A stretch of DNA of 64,000 bases from Selaginella moellendorffii (lineage: Eukaryota; Plantae; Lycopodiophyta). The notes under the pieces are model-generated. The model was not told the origin of the DNA, did not search any database, and saw only the letters and a list, made by a program, of their open reading frames with translations. This document shows, one piece after another, positions 5,135-12,286 of this stretch (positions are counted from its first letter, which is position 1; every line of letters begins with the position of its first letter). A program made the translations under genes and the position numbers. The stretch lies in assembly GCF_000143415.4 (NCBI RefSeq), contig NW_003314285.1:1433412-1497411 (forward strand), in the 5' to 3' direction.

Positions 5135-7083
5135 ATGGGGCAAGCTGGCGACGGTGAGAGAAGCTGTGATCGCCTGCTCCAATCTGGATGCTGGCGTGAC
5201 GGTGTGGGATTTGGCGTCGGGCGTGCCGCTGTCGCACCTCCGATCGTGCGCGGCGCCGCGCAATGCCTTGGCGTGTGTTGGACACCATTTCCTGGCGGCA
5301 TCGCAGATCCACAAGACTGCTAACAATGCCGGCGGCACGATCTTCTTCTGGACCTGGCACAAGGTGAGTGAGAGCAGGAATCGATCGATTTCTTCTTGCC
5401 AAAATCTCGAATTTGATCGGCCGTTTCATTCATTTTCTTTTCCTCTGCGTAGAACCAAGTGGCTTTCAAGAGCTATCCCGTGGAGCCGATCGAGCCTCTA
5501 GCTTGCACTGCCGATGGAGTTTACTTGGCGGGAGGAGGATCGTCGGGAAGAATTTATCTCTGGGAGGTGAGACTTCTCTTAACTTTGTGATTCACACCAT
5601 GACACGGGATTCTGGCAAAGGTCTCGAGTGGAAGATTGCTGCGAGTGTGGGCCGGGCACTACAAAGCCGTCAAGTGCCTCGTCTTCTCCGACGATGATTC
5701 GCTACTCATCTCTGGTGCCGAGGATGGACTCGTCAATGTCTATCCTCTCGTGAGGTAAGTTTGATCCGATCGATCGAGCTTTTCTCCTTGAAGCTTTCTT
5801 CTCATCCTTTCCGGCTTCCTTCCAGGGCCCTGGACAGCATCGAAGAAGCCGGGGAGACCCAGGTACCTTACATGCACAAATGGTCGGATCACACACTTCC
5901 AGTCACTGGATTGCTGGCCGGCTCTGGTGGTTCTAGCGCGATCATCGTCTCGTGCTCACTAGACCACACCTGCAAGGTACGTTTCTTTAGCTCTTCGCAG
6001 CAGCGTGTTAGTTTTTCCAGCTTACCGCGAGAGTTTGTATAGATATGGAGCTTGGCTCTCGGAGCTCTACTCCGGTCGATACTCTTCCCCACTCCCATCA
6101 ATGCTGTTGCACTTGATCCAGGGGAGTACGCGCTCTACGCCGGTGGAGTCGATGGCAGGATTTTTATCACGGCTCTAAACTTCGGTGTTCCATCGGGGTC
6201 TGGCTTGCATTCCGCGGATGGGCTACTCGGTGCTGACGGGATCGGCCACAGGTTGTGTGCTTTCTAAAGTTTTGTTGTTCCAATCCACCCGTCCGACTGC
6301 TTTTGACTAATCTGGAGTTGTTCTTGATAGAGCAGCCGTGCTATTACTGCTCTAGCATTTAGCATGGATGGGGTGTCGCTCGTCTCTGGCTCCGAGGACT
6401 GCACTGTCCGGTTGTGGGACACCGTGAGCCGCCAGGTTCTTCGGACGTTTTCTCACAGCAAAGGTGACCGACCAAAGTTTCTTTTTGTCTCTCCCAACGC
6501 AAAAGTTGCTTTGCTTTGCTGGTTTCTTGCAGGTCCTGTGAGCAGCCTTTTGGTGATACCACGGCCCTCGTCCCTGCTCAGCTCTACAGATCAGCAAGGC
6601 CGTCAAATCAACCGTCGCTTACCAACGCTTCCAGTGGTTCCGTTGAGCAAGTACGTAACAGTCGAGTCAGTGGCACAAGACTTCAAGCCTTGGGAAGGCC
6701 CCCCGGTTGTCCTTCCGTTAACTTGTCCTGCTGATGACGAGGATGCCGAGGGCTACTCTCACAGTATGGTCGCCATGGGAAGACAAATAAGAGAACTAGA
6801 GGTAAGAAAGAGTTTTTTGCCTGGATGAGAGACCGTTGACGGGTTTTGATGACAGCAACAAGGCTCCACGGCAGCGATGCAAATGGAGCTGGAGAGATTG
6901 CGATCGGAGCTCCGGCGGGCTCTTAACAATGGCCAGCAGTGGCAGCAATTGCACCAAGAACTTTACTGTTTCTGCGTGGACGAATTGATGGGTGGGAACC
7001 GGGACAGGGAAGACGACGGAGAGAACAAGGAAAGAACCAAGGGAAGAGCCAGCAAGCTGGGGGACAAGATGCGTGACAAGTAA
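5135..7083 (+). CDS. RID3: WD40 protein ROOT INITIATION DEFECTIVE 3 (Ipi3/WDR18 homolog), multi-exon; start codon out of frame as assembled
   Basis: Exons translate to AVIACSNLDAGVTVWDL..FLAASQ..GTIFFWTWHK|NQVAFKSYPVEPI..GGGSSGRIYLWE|..HYKAVKCLVFSDDDSLLISGAEDG..SLDHTCK..FPTPINAVALDPGE..VSGSEDCTVRLWD, with a C-terminal coiled coil ending at TAA 7083. Confidence 0.88.
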
Positions 7084-7102
7084 GCACAGATTTTGAGGAG
7101 GT

Positions 7103-9643
7103 TTAGGAGGTAGTGGATCGACTCAAACTACTGGTGAGAGACACTGCTTGATTAGAAGTTGTCAATTGTTGCACAGCCTATTATAACCAGACTTTGTGTT
7201 AGAGGACGAAGAACTGAGTTGATATATATACGTACTTGCATCGCAGCTAAGCGTCTTGCCACGCGCTTCTCTTCGTGCTCGCAGCAGCTGACGCGCTCAT
7301 TGTCGATCACAACATCGGCGCGTATGAAACCGTCCACCTCAGTGCACTGGATGTCGAGAGCAAGTCTTTGCTCTCTACACAAGGTCTCGAGCTGCTTGAC
7401 TGGATGGAGCATCACGTTTTCCGGAGTGGCGATTGGTTCTAAGAGCCTTTCATACACCTGAAGATGAGAGAAGTTACAAGAAAGTATACTCCAAAATATA
7501 CGACTTACCTTCCAAACGATATTTGGTTCGTATTCCGAGTCGATAAAAATTGAAGCTGCCAGTGTTTGAATCATGTCTCCAAGCAGCTGAAACAGAGAAT
7601 AAGCAGACAGGATCATTGGAGGACTTGGCTTACTTTTGGTGAGTTTAGTCTGGAAATGCCGAAAGTCGAGCATGCTTTCCCCCTTGCAAGCTCTTCGACA
7701 AGTGATTCTGCGAACTCGGCAATTTGAGGGACGAAGTGGACCTTCTGAAGATAGACGTGAAAGCCATGACGAATACTGACACAGGAATAGTGCTCCTTGT
7801 TGATCGTTGCCTGCTTTAAGGTGTTGAGGCGACCGGCCGACTGGTCCGGGAATGATCTGACCAAGTGCCGTGTCACGAGGTAGTCCAGCACTGCATCGCC
7901 GAGAAACTCTAGACGCCTGAAAGTGAAGTTGTCGTCATGAAAGCTCAGAGCAACTCGCAAGACCTGCTTGTTCCTGAACTGATAGCCGAGTTTCTCTTGT
8001 AGTTCGTTCAAATCATCGTCTGTTAATGATCCGCAGCCTGTGACTTCGAATCTGTGATGATCTTCGGCCCCAGGAGGAAACCGGACTGGTATCTGGAGCC
8101 AGTTCGCTGCTGCCATAGCGGCAGCAAGTTCCCCTTCCAGCACGCATGCCCCCAGAACGGCTTCTACCACGTCCGCCAGTGTCTTCGTCGAGAGCAGTTG
8201 TTCCGGAATCTCTGCCGCTGCTGGTATCATGCCCGGAGATATCCACTTCAGCGGCGAAAACATCTCCGCAAATACATACCGGTACAGATTCCGAGCTAGT
8301 GCCAAACTGGAAAGCGTGCTGTTGCAAACTATATTGTACAGCTCCAGGCCAAGCTCTTCACTGCCCATCGAAGGCGTCGTCGCGTAGACATACGTTCCAG
8401 CGACGATCTTCAGCACGCTGTCTCCTAACAGTTCTAGTGGCTCGTAAGATACATTGAAACAGCATGCTCTGGATGTCAAAGCCTCCAACAGCTAAAACCA
8501 CGTTTCAGTCCTCCAGAAAACAAACTTGCTACGAATTGTACCTTCAAAGCCGAGACCGGGACGTCCATTGCATCGCGCAGTTCTGCGGCTAGCAGTGCCA
8601 TCTCAAGCCTGTACATAACAGAAGGAAGCCGAAGAGCGCCTCTATGCAAGCTTCCCGGTAGTAAAGTTTTCGGAAGTACGCACTCCCTTCTTGAAAAGGT
8701 GACGGCTCTTAGCTTTTTCGTTAGTGTAGCATCTGGAAAGAAGAAACTCAGATCAAATGGTGATAGATAGTTAGAGTTTCATACCATTGTGTTTCGTGAG
8801 ATAGCTCAGTGCCCGGTGCGCCCTCACAGCAACAACTTCGTTCGAGTGTTTCGATAGAACGACGCACGATTTTCCAGCGCAAAGGATCAAGCTGTCAATC
8901 GCGATCTTCTCGTTCGAGGCCTGTGCTTCGGAAGCGATCATCGAGTCAGCGTAATGCAAACCTGAAGAAGTTGCAGCCGCCATCAAGTTCCAATCCACGG
9001 GCAGCTTAAACTCCTCTCTCCTCCATCGCCAAGTCTCTAGCAATGGAACGGCGTAGTAAAGCTTTGGACCTCTCGGTACTCCGATAGCCTCGCGTCTTGG
9101 GAGCGGCCCAGGACGAGATCGAAAAGCCATTTGGTAAATTCTTTGATCTTCACCACCTGGAATGAAAAGAGATCCAAGTAAGAAACTTCACACAAAGAGA
9201 GAGCATACTGTATAGTATACCTCGTCCGAGGGAACCAGCACTTCTCCAATCTCCTCTAGATGGGCACGGACTATGGAGTTTTCTTGGAGGAGCAATTCCA
9301 CTACCATCGCTGCCACGGCCGGATCGACTCTGGTGGGTAGAAGGATTGCAAACTCCGTGGCGTGCCGTTGCAATGGATCCTTGCCTTCCATCACAAGCTC
9401 ATAGCGTATGGCCACGGCATGGAACAAGATCCTGTCCGACGAATCGTCGACCCTTGGACTTGTCTGGACGACACCAGGAATGCCGCGCTCGTAGTGCCGT
9501 GGCGATGCAGTGAGCGGCGATTTGCCATCGCTAGGCGGCACAAGGGGATATTTCTTCTTGCCTGAATCTGGAGCAGCATTGCAATGGGAGATTTCCCCCA
9601 ATGCCGTGACAAGATCGTCGATCTTCTCCTCCAGGGCCTTCAT
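7103..9643 (-). CDS. Helicase-less DCL1-derived RNase III protein (platform, degenerate PAZ, connector, RNase IIIa, RNase IIIb, one dsRBD); 7 exons, 1-nt frameshift in exon 2
   Basis: Exons 9643-9221, 9156-8785, 8732-8542, 8491-7634, 7586-7509, 7457-7236, 7177-7103, all GT-AG. DCL1-like connector LPGSLHRGALRLPSVMYRLEMALLA. RIIIa YEPLELLGDSVLK..KTLADVVEA. RIIIb RLEFLGDAVLD..PKLLGDMIQT. dsRBD HPVKQLETLC..ARRLAA. May be a pseudogene. Confidence 0.8.
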
Positions 9644-10146
9644 CGCTCGCAAGAACGCGAATTTCCAGCTCCGATCGACTCGGAGAGCGAGAGAAAACCA
9701 GAAACCTCGAACAACAGGAGAAGATCCACCGATTCACCTCAGATACCTTCGGCGCTTGCAATCGCCGCCAAGGACGAGACTTTAGAGCTTGGATCGGCTC
9801 CGAGAGGGAAGGAAAGCTGGGCCAGCAACGCGATCGACCTCAAATCTTGCAGCGAGCTCCATGGAGGGAAAAACAATGCTGAAGAACAACCTAGTGATCC
9901 AACGGCTGGGATTAGCCGCGAGGTTTCATGGCTCCATATCCAAAAATTTGTTTCTGTAGAGACGATCTTTGGCTGCCACTCAAGCCTCTAGATTTAAATA
10001 CTATGGGAGAGAAACAAAGCCTCCATCTCGAATCTAGAACAAAGCATCTCTGCGACTAAAAAATATTCTTAGAAAGAACTTTGGCGATGGTAATTTAAGA
10101 TCATAGAAAGTGAAAAATCACGTTAATTCGCCTATGGTTTGTTTGT

Positions 10147-12286
10147 TTACTCGACCACATTGCGTATGAGTAGCCTGTAAGTGCCGAAGGAGTTCTTACT
10201 TTGCCATGCCCAGGGTATAAAAAACGCGCGGTGGAGACGAGGTGAGCTCTCATTGTCCAGGAACAAGCGTTTAGCCACGACCTGTTAGAAAAATACTCTT
10301 AGAGAATCTGGCAAGCGTAAACAAGCACGTACAGTCCATTTGGTTTGATTGTTTCCACGATACTCTACGCCCGGTCTGTCTAAGACTAGCTCCACCACAA
10401 AGTCACAGGAAGCGTCGCTTTGGAGCTGAGACAGGGATTTCGGAAGAGTGAGAACCTTCGAAAGAAAATAAGTAGCGAGATGAGATCTAACTTACAAATT
10501 GCTTTGGAGAAGCATTGTTATGCCTGTTGAAGTAGTCCGGAGCTGCTTTCGTTCCACCCAGCCTGCTGTCGAATGGAAACGGCATAAGTCCTCTAAAGCC
10601 ATCGTCGAGCCATCTCACTTGGTACTTGGCTGACGGCAGAAAGAACGAGGATGGGAAACGGTGCCACTCACTGCCAATGCAAACTGCATTGAAACGCAGG
10701 AGTTAAAGAGAATTGAAAATGCGAGGCTTGCCTGTGGAATTCTCGGTTGGATTAGTTGGAAGGTGTGTGTAAATCTGCATCGGTGCCGAGTAACCTTGAA
10801 GTAAAGACGTTGTTCGACTATACGATGCCACCAGGATGAAAGATAAGAGCAAAGGCCTCAGTTTCGTGAACAGACCATGCACGAAGCTCATTTTTCGTGG
10901 TACCAGACCTGGAATCCGCTCGATGCTAGCTGCCGCAGCTACGCAAATGAGGGGATAGATTGGATAGAGGAACCTGAAAAGAAAAAAAGCTGAGTGAACT
11001 AAGATAGAGAGCATAGTTTTGATACCTTTCTTCTTTGTGAGGTTGCAAGGACATGAATCCAAACCACAAATACAAAGGTGAGATTACCAGTAGGAGATGC
11101 TTGTCGGTACTTCGTCGCACGAAAAGCAGCAAAACAGGTAGCCCGAACGCCAACAACAACGCAAGATTGAAATTGTTGAGCCCATTCCGAAGATAAAACA
11201 AGGGTCCCTCCACACCGTATAAAATGCTGTCGCCACCTCCCACGACATTGTAGGTGACGAGGTTGAGAATAGAAAGCTTCCACTGACCGTAAAATAATCG
11301 ATCACATAGTGCTGACAGCGCCTGCATAAACAATCAAGTTGAGTTTCCAGGAGAATATCCACCAATTTATAAGAGAAAAGAGGAACTTACGATGAGAACG
11401 ACTGAGGATTTAACACCGGCCATGAAAACCTTGACGGAGCTACCATTCGCCAAAGAGTACACTACCACGGGAAGAACCGCAAGGCCCGAGAATGGCCAGC
11501 CAACAAGGACCCCCAAGGCAGCCACGGCGACGGCAGCTTCAAACTTATCGGCAAGCACAGCCGCTGATGCAAGGCTGATAGCGTACATTGAAAAGGTGCT
11601 CGGCAGAAAAGCTGAGAAAGGAGAAAAAAAAACAAGAAAAGTGAGTGAGAACAGCCTGAGAATTTTTCCTTACTTGTGCTAGCTGTGTAGCAACCACTGG
11701 CAAAGCAGAGTAAAACCAAAGTGTATGATGCCATCCTTTTTCCAAACCTTTCGGACACGGCTGCCACAAGAGCTCCATCGACGCCCGCAGACACCAAGGC
11801 GAATGCCAGTTTAATCAGATAGAAAACTTTCACCTGGAAAAGGAAGATAATTTCAATCCAAAAGAGAAACTTTCCTACCTTTGCGAGAATGTAAGAAGCT
11901 GGAGCTCCAATAACGGCATGAATCAGGATGTAAAGATACGATCGAAGAGCAAACTCCGAGCTAGTCCAGAGAAACGAAACTCCAATTATTTTAGCGAGAG
12001 AACAGACACTCTCTAAAGCTCTCACTCACCTGTACTCCCAAGTTTGAAATCCCGACCCATAGAGAAGAAAATGCAGCGGCTCCCAGTAATTGAAAACCTC
12101 GTCGCAGTCGTGTACGATGTTGGAGCTCGCGCTGAAGTAGCGAGTGATGAAGAGCGCGGCGAAAGCCGCAGCAAATCCGACATTCTTACTGACCTCCGGA
12201 AGATCCTTCTTCTTGGCATCCTCTTCTTCGCTGTTAATCTCCGCTGCCGAGGAGCGATCGTGCCTCCGCTGCCGGAGCTCAGCCAT
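10147..12286 (-). CDS. ALG9: Dol-P-Man alpha-1,2-mannosyltransferase ALG9 (GT22), multi-exon
   Basis: Motifs IVHDCDEVFNYWEPLHFLLYG..FQTWEYSSEFALRSY, LVGWPF, YGVEGPLFYLRN..NFN, QPHKEERFLYPIYPLI, CIGSEWHRFPSSFFLP; stop at 10147-10149. Confidence 0.93.

What the first reader, a model, noticed from the sequence alone, without database searches (positions are those of the whole stretch)
7103..9643. Helicase-less DCL1 derivative with Drosha-like architecture
The roughly 740-aa reconstructed protein begins at the platform region. TEFAILL..FTKWLFDLVL resembles DCL1 SEFAILF..FHVRLMSIVL, and the connector LPGSLHRGALRLPS resembles DCL1 GSL.RGAQRLPS. It has no helicase or DUF283, and ALG9 ends 500 bp upstream, so there is no room for them. 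The PAZ interval is shrunk to about 90 aa, followed by two RNase III domains and one dsRBD. Plants lack Drosha, and the RTL proteins I know do not keep platform and connector, so this may be an undescribed small-RNA enzyme class (inference).
Basis: partly seen in the sequence, partly recalled or inferred. Interest (0 to 1): 0.85.

Follow-up and report, generated by a model that had tools for sequence, protein, structure and literature searches.

The report
Selaginella minimal Dicer-like gene (mDCL)
This is a real, expressed Selaginella gene for a Dicer-like enzyme with no helicase, but it belongs to the already described "minimal Dicer-like" (mDCL) family of land plants; this window's copy carries a one-base frameshift, and the gene has lost the core of its RNA-end-binding PAZ domain.

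Summary
A 7-exon gene on the minus strand (ATG 9643, stop 7103) encodes about 740 aa: platform, a shrunken PAZ interval, connector, RNase IIIa, RNase IIIb and a dsRBD-like end. There is no helicase or DUF283, and an Alg9-like gene ends about 430 bp upstream. RNA-seq confirms all six introns.

Most reads and a transcript contig carry the extra base, so the other allele is intact.

This is not an undescribed class. It groups (SH-aLRT 100) with helicase-less proteins that align with it end to end, from Diphasiastrum, four liverworts, two ferns and Ginkgo. This is the mDCL clade (Physcomitrium mDCL; Marchantia Mp6g09830, called MpMDCL or "MpDCL1b"). A Selaginella fragment was already placed beside mDCL in 2016.

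A sister relationship to DCL1 is neither shown nor rejected (AU p = 0.46). The fold is that of a Dicer core, not Drosha.

The catalytic Glu of RNase IIIb (human E1813) is replaced in all 10 mDCL members checked, while RNase IIIa stays intact. Selaginella alone has lost 61 aa of the PAZ core.

The scan already reached the same reading on the other haplotype (s1-374860).

The parts
7103..9643 (-). Coding region of the Selaginella mDCL gene. Seven exons: 9643-9221, 9156-8785, 8732-8542, 8491-7634, 7586-7509, 7457-7236, 7177-7103. About 740 aa once the frame is restored.
   Evidence: Reading of the sequence and translations. All six introns are confirmed by spliced reads or contigs (table 5).
9644..9900 (-). 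5' UTR and approximate transcript start. An in-frame stop at 9736-9734 rules out an N-terminal extension.
   Evidence: RNA depth fades at about 9880-9920, the X1 contig spans 9349-9878, and no joint leads upstream. The sequence was read.
9068..9069 (-). Frameshift site in this window's allele. One base is missing here compared with the expressed intact allele. Without it the frame ends at ..TPFHC*, about residue 183.
   Evidence: Frame change in exon 2. The extra base ('put in behind 9068: C') is seen in 3/4 X17 reads and in the X1 contig. One X17 read and one X15 read lack it (table 4).
8987..9496 (-). Platform region (about residues 50-198, HYERG..PVDWN). Includes TEFAILL (9358-9338) and FTKWLFDLVL (9138-9109). 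Interrupted by intron 1 (9220-9157).
   Evidence: hhalign against the mDCL profile: probability 97.5%, E 7.6e-12. The family profile aligns to DCL1 947-1112. Coordinates.
8785..8986 (-). PAZ remnant (about residues 199-265). It lacks the equivalents of Diphasiastrum residues 207-233 and 253-286, including the SYxDY(Y/F) helix.
   Evidence: MAFFT gaps. No Pfam PAZ hit. hhalign aligns only the first 49 aa of this exon part. The orthologs do have Pfam PAZ hits.
8542..8732 (-). Exon 3: connector helix region, including LPGSLHRGALRLPS (8661-8620).
   Evidence: Alignment with orthologs and with DCL1 LSGSLIRGAQRLPS.
8070..8491 (-). RNase IIIa domain. Catalytic residues E346, E349, D353, D436 and E439 are all present.
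   Evidence: Pfam Ribonuclease_3; motif table; residue numbering.
7509..8000 (-). RNase IIIb domain, split by the intron at 7633-7587. E524, D528 and D619 are present, but the fourth acidic residue is Gln622.
   Evidence: Pfam; motif table; coordinates.
7566..7568 (-). Codon CAA for Gln622. It aligns with Arabidopsis DCL1 E1696 and with human DICER1 E1813.
   Evidence: No variant was reported at this place in the RNA reads (table 3).
7175..7406 (-). C-terminal dsRBD-like domain (about residues 659-716), crossing the last intron (7235-7178).
   Evidence: The family profile aligns to DCL1 dsRBD1, up to residue 1798. The ortholog model shows alpha-beta-beta-beta-alpha at P0002 729-790 with pLDDT above 90. 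Pfam dsrm is only weak in Diphasiastrum (E 0.006) and absent in Selaginella.

Best explanation
This is the Selaginella moellendorffii ortholog of the land-plant MINIMAL DICER-LIKE (mDCL) lineage. That lineage is old and lacks the helicase and DUF283. Its members start at the platform and carry PAZ, connector, RNase IIIa, RNase IIIb and one dsRBD-like domain.

Shown here:
- The gene is transcribed at a low level and correctly spliced.
- This window's allele has a 1-nt frameshift, while another allele is intact.
- RNase IIIa keeps all five acidic catalytic residues.
- RNase IIIb has Gln in place of the last metal-binding Glu, and this replacement is shared by the whole clade.
- Selaginella alone has deleted 61 aa of the PAZ core.

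Inferred mechanism: the protein binds dsRNA across the intramolecular RNase IIIa/IIIb dimer, the connector and the dsRBD. It cuts only the strand presented to RNase IIIa, or it acts as a half-active partner or modulator of a canonical DCL. In Physcomitrium, mDCL works together with DCL3 on heterochromatic 23/24-nt siRNAs. Without the PAZ 3'-end pocket, the Selaginella protein probably no longer measures length from a 3' end.

The confidence of 0.8 is for the identity as an mDCL-clade member. The single-strand-cutting mechanism on its own I rate at about 0.35-0.4.
For: Identity:
- The best hits of exon 4 are short proteins: Diphasiastrum KAJ7553121 (805 aa, 48% identity), Riccia, Ceratopteris, Ginkgo and the 219-aa Selaginella fragment EFJ13346 (97%). 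They score well above full-length DCLs.
- These proteins align with the Selaginella model along the whole length.
- The mDCL clade has SH-aLRT 100, Selaginella+Diphasiastrum 95 and the liverworts 100.
- In the literature, Mp6g09830 is MpMDCL, the gene most similar to Physcomitrium mDCL; it forms a fourth clade that is also present in vascular plants (PMC13738684). The helicase-less PAZ+2xRNase III class is described in PMC11799827.

Expression and splicing.

Catalytic pattern:
- RNase IIIa is intact in all mDCLs.
- The last Glu of RNase IIIb is Q, K or P in 8 of 8 proteins and Q in two further genomic loci.
- It is E in 34 of 35 other Dicers.
- Substitutions at human DICER1 E1813 stop cleavage of the 5p strand but not of the 3p strand (PMC4712775).

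Fold: the Diphasiastrum ortholog model (pLDDT 86.9, pTM 0.88) matches the DCL3, DCL4 and mammalian Dicer cores over about 810 columns at TM 0.69-0.74.

Selection: allelic SNPs in the reads are 13 nonsynonymous to 10 synonymous, giving pN/pS about 0.41 (one-sided p = 0.03 against neutrality).
Against: - The Physcomitrium mDCL sequence itself could not be retrieved. Its link to this clade rests on published statements about the Marchantia gene and on my inference that M. paleacea P0160 is the ortholog of Mp6g09830.
- No biochemical data exist for any mDCL. Gln at this site might leave some residual activity, or the protein might be purely an RNA-binding factor.
- In Selaginella several signs point to relaxed constraint: the PAZ collapse, a frameshifted allele, 7 amino-acid differences per 200 residues between the haplotypes, and a terminal branch 1.6 times longer than that of Diphasiastrum.
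- Expression is low, at about 1-5x depth against 15-40x for the neighbouring genes.
Confidence: 0.8

Rival explanations
1. The Selaginella copy is a decaying gene. The mDCL lineage is functional elsewhere, but in Selaginella it is being lost, and what is seen here is a transcribed pseudogene in the making.
For: - Frameshift in this window's allele. One or two RNA reads agree with the window at that site, which suggests the deletion is real and not an assembly error.
- 61 aa of the PAZ core are deleted.
- The two haplotypes differ at 7 of 200 residues.
- Long terminal branch and low expression.
Against: - An intact allele is expressed, and all six introns are spliced precisely.
- All RNase IIIa catalytic residues, the conserved Gln of RNase IIIb, and the connector and dsRBD motifs are retained.
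- pN/pS is about 0.41, below 1.
- There are no other stops or frameshifts in 2.2 kb of coding sequence.
Confidence: 0.2
2. One reading: a lineage-specific, previously undescribed truncation of DCL1 that created a new, Drosha-like class of plant small-RNA enzyme.
For: - DCL1 is the most similar solved protein.
- A clade of mDCL plus DCL1 is not rejected (AU p = 0.46).
- The domain order resembles that of Drosha or Giardia Dicer.
Against: - Orthologs that align end to end exist in liverworts, another lycophyte, ferns and Ginkgo, so the truncation predates the split between bryophytes and vascular plants.
- The class is already published.
- The fold is closer to Dicer cores than to Drosha.
- RNase IIIb is not catalytically complete, unlike in Drosha.
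Confidence: 0.05
3. A fully competent small Dicer that cuts both strands, as Giardia Dicer does. On this reading, Gln in RNase IIIb is tolerated or is compensated by a neighbouring residue.
For: - Physcomitrium mdcl mutants change 23/24-nt siRNA levels, as summarised in PMC5144951 and PMC10721683. This shows a role in siRNA biogenesis.
- Three of the four acidic residues of RNase IIIb remain in Selaginella, Diphasiastrum and Marchantia.
Against: - The equivalent Glu is a metal-binding residue, and its substitution in human DICER1 abolishes cutting by RNase IIIb.
- Several mDCLs have also lost the first-motif Glu of RNase IIIb: V, G or A, or Asp in Ginkgo.
- The ferns have Pro at the position.
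- Selaginella lacks the PAZ pocket needed for measuring length.
Confidence: 0.12

Closest known systems
MINIMAL DICER-LIKE (mDCL) of Physcomitrium patens, and Marchantia polymorpha Mp6g09830 (MpMDCL; called 'MpDCL1b' in Csicsely et al. 2025)
   Same: No helicase or DUF283; platform/PAZ region, connector and two RNase III domains. It falls in the same clade as the liverwort orthologs (SH-aLRT 100) and aligns with them end to end. It shares their replacement of the last catalytic Glu of RNase IIIb.
   Different: Selaginella has lost 61 aa of the PAZ core, and neither Pfam nor hhalign detects a PAZ domain. This window's allele is frameshifted. The Physcomitrium sequence itself was not compared.
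Arabidopsis DCL1 (PDB 7ELD)
   Same: It is the best sequence match among solved structures: 534 bits, covering DCL1 947-1112 and 1192-1798, that is, platform through dsRBD1. A sister relationship is not rejected.
   Different: No helicase, DUF283 or second dsRBD. RNase IIIb has Gln where DCL1 has E1696. mDCL forms a clade of its own.
Drosha (PDB 5B16, 6V5B, 9ASM)
   Same: General domain order: platform-like and PAZ-like region, connector, two RNase III domains, one dsRBD, and no helicase.
   Different: Only the RNase III domains match in sequence (about 60-63 bits). TM is 0.45-0.54, against 0.69-0.74 for Dicer cores. Both Drosha RNase III sites are active, from established knowledge.
Giardia intestinalis Dicer (PDB 2FFL)
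   Same: A 'minimal' Dicer of platform, PAZ, connector and two RNase III domains, without a helicase.
   Different: The structural match is weak (TM about 0.35). Giardia Dicer has a working PAZ ruler, two active sites and no dsRBD, from established knowledge.
Human DICER1 RNase IIIb hotspot mutants (E1813Q and others)
   Same: The same residue of the RNase IIIb metal site is replaced, and E1813Q is the very same substitution. In human Dicer this leaves cutting by RNase IIIa intact and abolishes cutting by RNase IIIb (PMC4712775).
   Different: Those are somatic disease mutations in a full-length Dicer. Here the substitution is the conserved wild-type state of a whole plant clade.
Plant RNASE THREE-LIKE proteins (RTL1-3)
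   Same: Short plant proteins made of RNase III and dsRBD domains, without a helicase.
   Different: RTLs have no platform or connector, from established knowledge. This protein's N-terminal half is homologous to the DCL1 platform/PAZ/connector. RTL sequences were not put in the tree.

Membership tests
mDCL (minimal Dicer-like) clade | No helicase or DUF283; the protein starts at the platform | tested here: met
   ATG at 9643 with an in-frame stop at 9736-9734. The transcript starts at about 9900 and has no upstream joint. An Alg9-like gene lies directly upstream. The N-terminus aligns with the N-termini of the orthologs.
mDCL (minimal Dicer-like) clade | Two tandem RNase III domains after a Dicer-type connector | tested here: met
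   Pfam finds two Ribonuclease_3 stretches, E 5e-31. The connector LPGSLHRGALRLPS is aligned.
mDCL (minimal Dicer-like) clade | PAZ domain present | tested here: not met
   No Pfam PAZ hit. hhalign aligns only the part before the PAZ core. The equivalents of Diphasiastrum residues 207-233 and 253-286 are deleted. The orthologs have Pfam PAZ hits at or near the curated cut-off (29.8, 29.8, 28.7 and 19.1 bits against 28.8). So Selaginella carries a derived form without the PAZ core.
mDCL (minimal Dicer-like) clade | Phylogenetic placement with known mDCL genes | tested here: met
   It forms a clade with the M. paleacea, Riccia and Calypogeia proteins, which have the architecture of Mp6g09830 (SH-aLRT 100).
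mDCL (minimal Dicer-like) clade | Role in 23/24-nt heterochromatic siRNA accumulation (the Physcomitrium phenotype) | not testable with these tools
   It needs mutants and small-RNA sequencing. It is known only from the literature.
DCL1 | [quoted passage not shown] | tested here: not met
   Only the part equivalent to DCL1 947-1798 is present.
DCL1 | Placement inside, or as sister to, the DCL1 clade | tested here: inconclusive
   The quick IQ-TREE tree leaves mDCL, DCL1 and DCL2+3+4 unresolved. The AU test does not reject mDCL+DCL1 (difference in log-likelihood 1.34, p = 0.46). Only two DCL1 sequences were sampled.
Drosha | Sequence and fold closer to Drosha than to Dicer; two active RNase III sites | tested here: not met
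   63 bits and RNase III only against Drosha, compared with 534 bits against DCL1. TM 0.45-0.54 for Drosha against 0.69-0.74 for Dicer cores. RNase IIIb lacks a catalytic Glu.
RTL1-3 (RNASE THREE-LIKE) | RNase III and dsRBD domains only, with no Dicer platform or connector | tested here: not met
   The platform and connector are homologous to those of DCL1. RTL sequences were not included in a tree.

The most novel reading that the evidence does not exclude
mDCL proteins are Dicers that naturally cut only one strand. On this reading the RNase IIIb metal site has been disabled (Glu to Gln, Lys or Pro) since before bryophytes and vascular plants split, while RNase IIIa stays intact. They would then nick dsRNA, or act as half-active partners of DCL3 that shift siRNA length. 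The Selaginella copy, having also lost the PAZ 3'-end pocket, would be a helicase-less dsRNA nickase or decoy with no way of measuring length. No plant enzyme of that type has been characterised biochemically.
Probability: 0.3. Interest if true: 0.7.

Novelty: new variant of a known kind. Interest (0 to 1): 0.4.

Why it matters
The headline claim of a new plant small-RNA enzyme class does not hold, because the mDCL class has been in the literature since 2015.

What remains useful:
- It gives a complete, RNA-supported gene model for the Selaginella mDCL. Public annotation has only a 219-aa fragment. One paper counts four DCLs in Selaginella and says this type occurs only in mosses and ferns.
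- The whole clade has given up one of its two cutting sites. This yields a concrete, testable idea of why mDCL affects 23-nt and 24-nt siRNAs differently in moss.
- Selaginella offers a natural version without the PAZ core, plus a segregating frameshift allele. These bear on whether the lineage is being lost in vascular plants.

Tried and rejected
- A 53-nt GT..AG "intron" (GTCCTG..CAAAG) inside exon 2 could have bypassed the frameshift. No junction reads support it, whereas reads show an extra base. Rejected.
- An alternative acceptor for intron 1 would drop the conserved FTKWLFDLVL segment. Rejected.
- The other haplotype's DNA could not be fetched through EFJ13346/P0001: no record.
- Three homolog searches found liverwort, lycophyte and Ginkgo members but not the moss mDCL. 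Coruh 2015 and Liu 2012 are not held, and a search for the DCL1 E1696Q mutant found nothing. The statement that engineered DCL1 E-to-Q mutants are semi-active therefore rests on my memory alone and is not used as evidence.
- The AlphaFold model built from a 5-sequence alignment was unusable (pLDDT 39.8). A 50-sequence alignment gave pLDDT 86.9.
- The "careful" IQ-TREE run did not finish in two attempts, so the quick tree and one AU test were used.
- Pfam on ORF pieces that read into introns missed the dsRBD.
- The joined spliced protein, with X at the frameshift, was assembled only inside local scripts for alignment and trees. It was not sent to any database or structure tool. Searches used single exons by reference, or the Diphasiastrum ortholog.
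Full report
WHAT IS THERE

The finding lies on the minus strand. Reading the sequence, locating splice motifs and translating the pieces gives seven exons: 9643-9221, 9156-8785, 8732-8542, 8491-7634, 7586-7509, 7457-7236 and 7177-7103.

I laid two 2026 RNA-seq runs (X15, X17) and two sets of older transcript contigs (X1, X7) on 6900-11400. All six introns (47-64 nt, CT..AC on the plus strand, so GT..AG on the gene's strand) are confirmed by spliced reads or contigs. The read direction is the same as for the upstream minus-strand gene. Depth is low, about 1-5x against 15-40x for the neighbours.

Coverage fades at about 9880-9920, and no joint leads further upstream. An in-frame stop lies at 9736-9734. 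The upstream gene is an Alg9-like mannosyltransferase (Pfam Glyco_transf_22), and its transcript ends near 10071. Downstream, a WD40 gene on the plus strand converges on this gene, and their 3' ends overlap.

Exon 2 is not one frame in the window. The frame that reads VVKIKEFTKWLFDLVLGRSQDARLSEYRE runs into a stop, and the rest (PKLYYAVPLLE..) is in another frame.

Three of 4 X17 reads and the X1 transcript contig carry one extra base behind plus-strand 9068, which restores the frame. The counts at the neighbouring SNPs 9043 and 9053 are also 3 of 4, which suggests these are the same reads and that they come from the other haplotype. One X17 read and one X15 read lack the extra base, which agrees with the window (tables 3 and 4).

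So an intact allele is expressed. The window's allele most likely carries a real 1-nt deletion, although this rests on only one or two reads. An earlier follow-up in this scan studied the other haplotype as an "intact" copy (s1-374860), which fits.

Across the coding sequence the reads show 13 nonsynonymous and 10 synonymous differences. This gives pN/pS of about 0.41, with a one-sided p of 0.03 against neutrality.

WHAT IT IS

Pfam finds two RNase III domains in exon 4. An exhaustive phmmer search with exon 4 returned the following top hits:
- a 219-aa Selaginella moellendorffii fragment model (EFJ13346.1, 97% identity; this identifies the organism and represents the other haplotype);
- a set of short proteins: Diphasiastrum complanatum KAJ7553121 (805 aa, 48% identity), Riccia fluitans (720 aa), Ceratopteris richardii (906 aa), Ginkgo Gb_37867 (595 aa), and unnamed transcriptome proteins.

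Full-length DCLs score far lower. Further searches added Marchantia paleacea (819 aa), Calypogeia fissa and Riccia sorocarpa.

All of these proteins lack a helicase. They align with the Selaginella model from the HY(E/D)R motif near the N-terminus to the C-terminal dsRBD-like domain. No full-length Selaginella model turned up in a library of 15 billion proteins.

A profile of the family matches Arabidopsis DCL1 (7eld_A) with E 4.5e-159. Profile positions 38-193 align to DCL1 947-1112 (platform), and positions 221-800 align to DCL1 1192-1798 (PAZ, connector, RNase IIIa and IIIb, dsRBD1). DCL3 scores 368 bits and DCL4 284 bits. Drosha matches only in the RNase III domains, at about 60 bits. Selaginella exon 1 on its own matches the family profile at 97.5% probability.

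An AlphaFold model of the Diphasiastrum ortholog, built from a 50-sequence alignment, reached pLDDT 86.9 and pTM 0.88. It superposes over about 810 columns on the cores of DCL3, DCL4 and mammalian Dicer in the dicing state (TM 0.69-0.74). It superposes less well on Drosha (0.45-0.54) and on Giardia Dicer (about 0.35). Its C-terminus folds as alpha-beta-beta-beta-alpha, which is a dsRBD.

PHYLOGENY

I built a 44-row IQ-TREE tree with the quick search and the LG+C20 PMSF model.
- The nine helicase-less proteins form one clade (SH-aLRT 100).
- Inside it, Selaginella+Diphasiastrum has support 95, the liverworts 100, and ferns+Ginkgo 82. The gene tree therefore follows the species tree, and the lineage predates the split between bryophytes and vascular plants.
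- DCL2+DCL3+DCL4 form a clade (98) that excludes both mDCL and DCL1.
- The order among mDCL, DCL1 and that clade is unresolved.
- An AU test does not reject mDCL+DCL1 (p = 0.46).

"DCL1 derivative" is therefore possible but not shown. Only two DCL1 sequences were available.

WHAT IS ALREADY KNOWN

The class is already known from several papers.
- Physcomitrium mDCL (Coruh 2015) lacks the helicase and affects 23/24-nt heterochromatic siRNAs together with DCL3, as summarised in PMC5144951 and PMC10721683.
[quoted passage not shown] This description fits EFJ13346, which has a single Pfam RNase III stretch.
- PMC11799827 (2025) characterised Marchantia Mp6g09830, under the name "MpDCL1b", as a new minimal DCL class. 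[quoted passage not shown] It counted four DCLs in Selaginella.
- PMC13738684 (2026) renames the same gene MpMDCL, describes it as most similar to Physcomitrium mDCL, treats it as a fourth DCL clade and says it is present in vascular plants.

1. Catalytic residues. RNase IIIa keeps E..E..D and D..E in every mDCL. In RNase IIIb the last Glu (LGDxxE; DCL1 E1696 by the numbering; human E1813 by the conserved G-D-x-x-E motif) is replaced in every member:
   - Gln in Selaginella (Q622, codon 7568-7566), Diphasiastrum, M. paleacea, Calypogeia and R. fluitans;
   - Lys in R. sorocarpa;
   - Pro in the two ferns;
   - Gln again in two further unannotated genomic loci (L001, L002).
   That makes 10 of 10 members, against Glu in 34 of 35 canonical and outgroup Dicers. 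Several members have also changed the first-motif Glu of RNase IIIb. Substitutions at human E1813, including E1813Q, abolish cutting by RNase IIIb while cutting by RNase IIIa continues (PMC4712775). None of the three mDCL papers I could read mentions this pattern (for PMC11799827). I could not read Coruh 2015. Two other first-stage notes on this stretch proposed a nickase for Selaginella, and the follow-up on the other haplotype also called the substitution a family trait.
2. The PAZ core is gone in Selaginella only. The equivalents of Diphasiastrum residues 207-233 and 253-286 are missing. These correspond to strands 221-230, half of the hairpin 247-258 and the SYxDY(Y/F) helix 274-281 in the model. 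Pfam PAZ is not detected, and hhalign cannot align the region. The introns here are confirmed by RNA, so this is not a missed exon.

HOW IT MOST LIKELY WORKS

The following is inference. The protein has a Dicer core without a helicase. It would bind dsRNA along the RNase IIIa/IIIb pseudo-dimer, the connector and the dsRBD. Only RNase IIIa is chemically complete. The protein would therefore nick one strand, or act as a half-active partner or competitor of a canonical DCL, which fits the genetic dependence of mDCL on DCL3 in moss. The Selaginella protein lacks the 3'-end pocket, so it should not measure length from a 3' end.

The main rival is that the Selaginella copy is decaying. Evidence for that reading is the frameshift allele, the PAZ loss, 7 amino-acid differences per 200 residues between the haplotypes, and a long branch. 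Evidence against it is the intact expressed allele, the precise splicing, the retained motifs and pN/pS of about 0.4.

LIMITS

- The joined spliced protein has no reference and was not sent to any search or fold tool. It was used only in local scripts, with X at the frameshift.
- The structure shown is that of the Diphasiastrum ortholog.
- The moss mDCL sequence was not obtained.
- The tree comes from a quick search.
- RTL proteins were excluded on architecture, not by a tree.

VERDICT

It is a variant without the PAZ core, and it shares the family-wide half-dead catalytic centre.

Noticed in passing
P0043 (XP_002989272.2; not in this window): A second short Selaginella Dicer-like protein (608 aa, named 'endoribonuclease Dicer homolog 1'; two RNase III domains plus dsRBDs). 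It groups with DCL1 (SH-aLRT 99). It has Asn in place of the RNase IIIa motif-2 Asp, and Gln in place of the last Glu of RNase IIIb. It is the only non-mDCL protein in the set with that change.
   Followed up: partly
window 6900-7200: The plus-strand WD40 gene and the minus-strand mDCL gene converge, and their 3' ends overlap. Reads of both orientations cover this stretch, and one X1 contig runs across both genes (tables 2 and 8). The overlap could form a natural antisense pair.
   Followed up: no
window 7011: A 3-nt insertion polymorphism (GAC) at the 3' end of the WD40 gene, seen in about a third to a half of the reads and in both contig sets (table 4).
   Followed up: no
window 10684-10731: An intron of the Alg9-like gene has CT..GC ends on the plus strand, so it is a GC-AG intron on the gene's strand. 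It is well supported by reads (table 5).
   Followed up: no
L001:2343-5414 and L002:654-1824: Two further unannotated mDCL-type genes on assembled contigs of SRA runs SRR33208241 and SRR33208280 (organisms unknown). Both have LGDxxQT in RNase IIIb. L001 keeps a full PAZ (MSYWEYYDEK). L002 has Val in place of the first-motif Glu of RNase IIIb.
   Followed up: partly
P0005 (Ginkgo biloba Gb_37867): A Ginkgo protein, from a poor gene model, falls inside the mDCL clade beside the ferns (SH-aLRT 82). This suggests that seed plants, or at least gymnosperms, retain the lineage, contrary to the statement in PMC11799827 that the type is absent from seed plants.
   Followed up: partly
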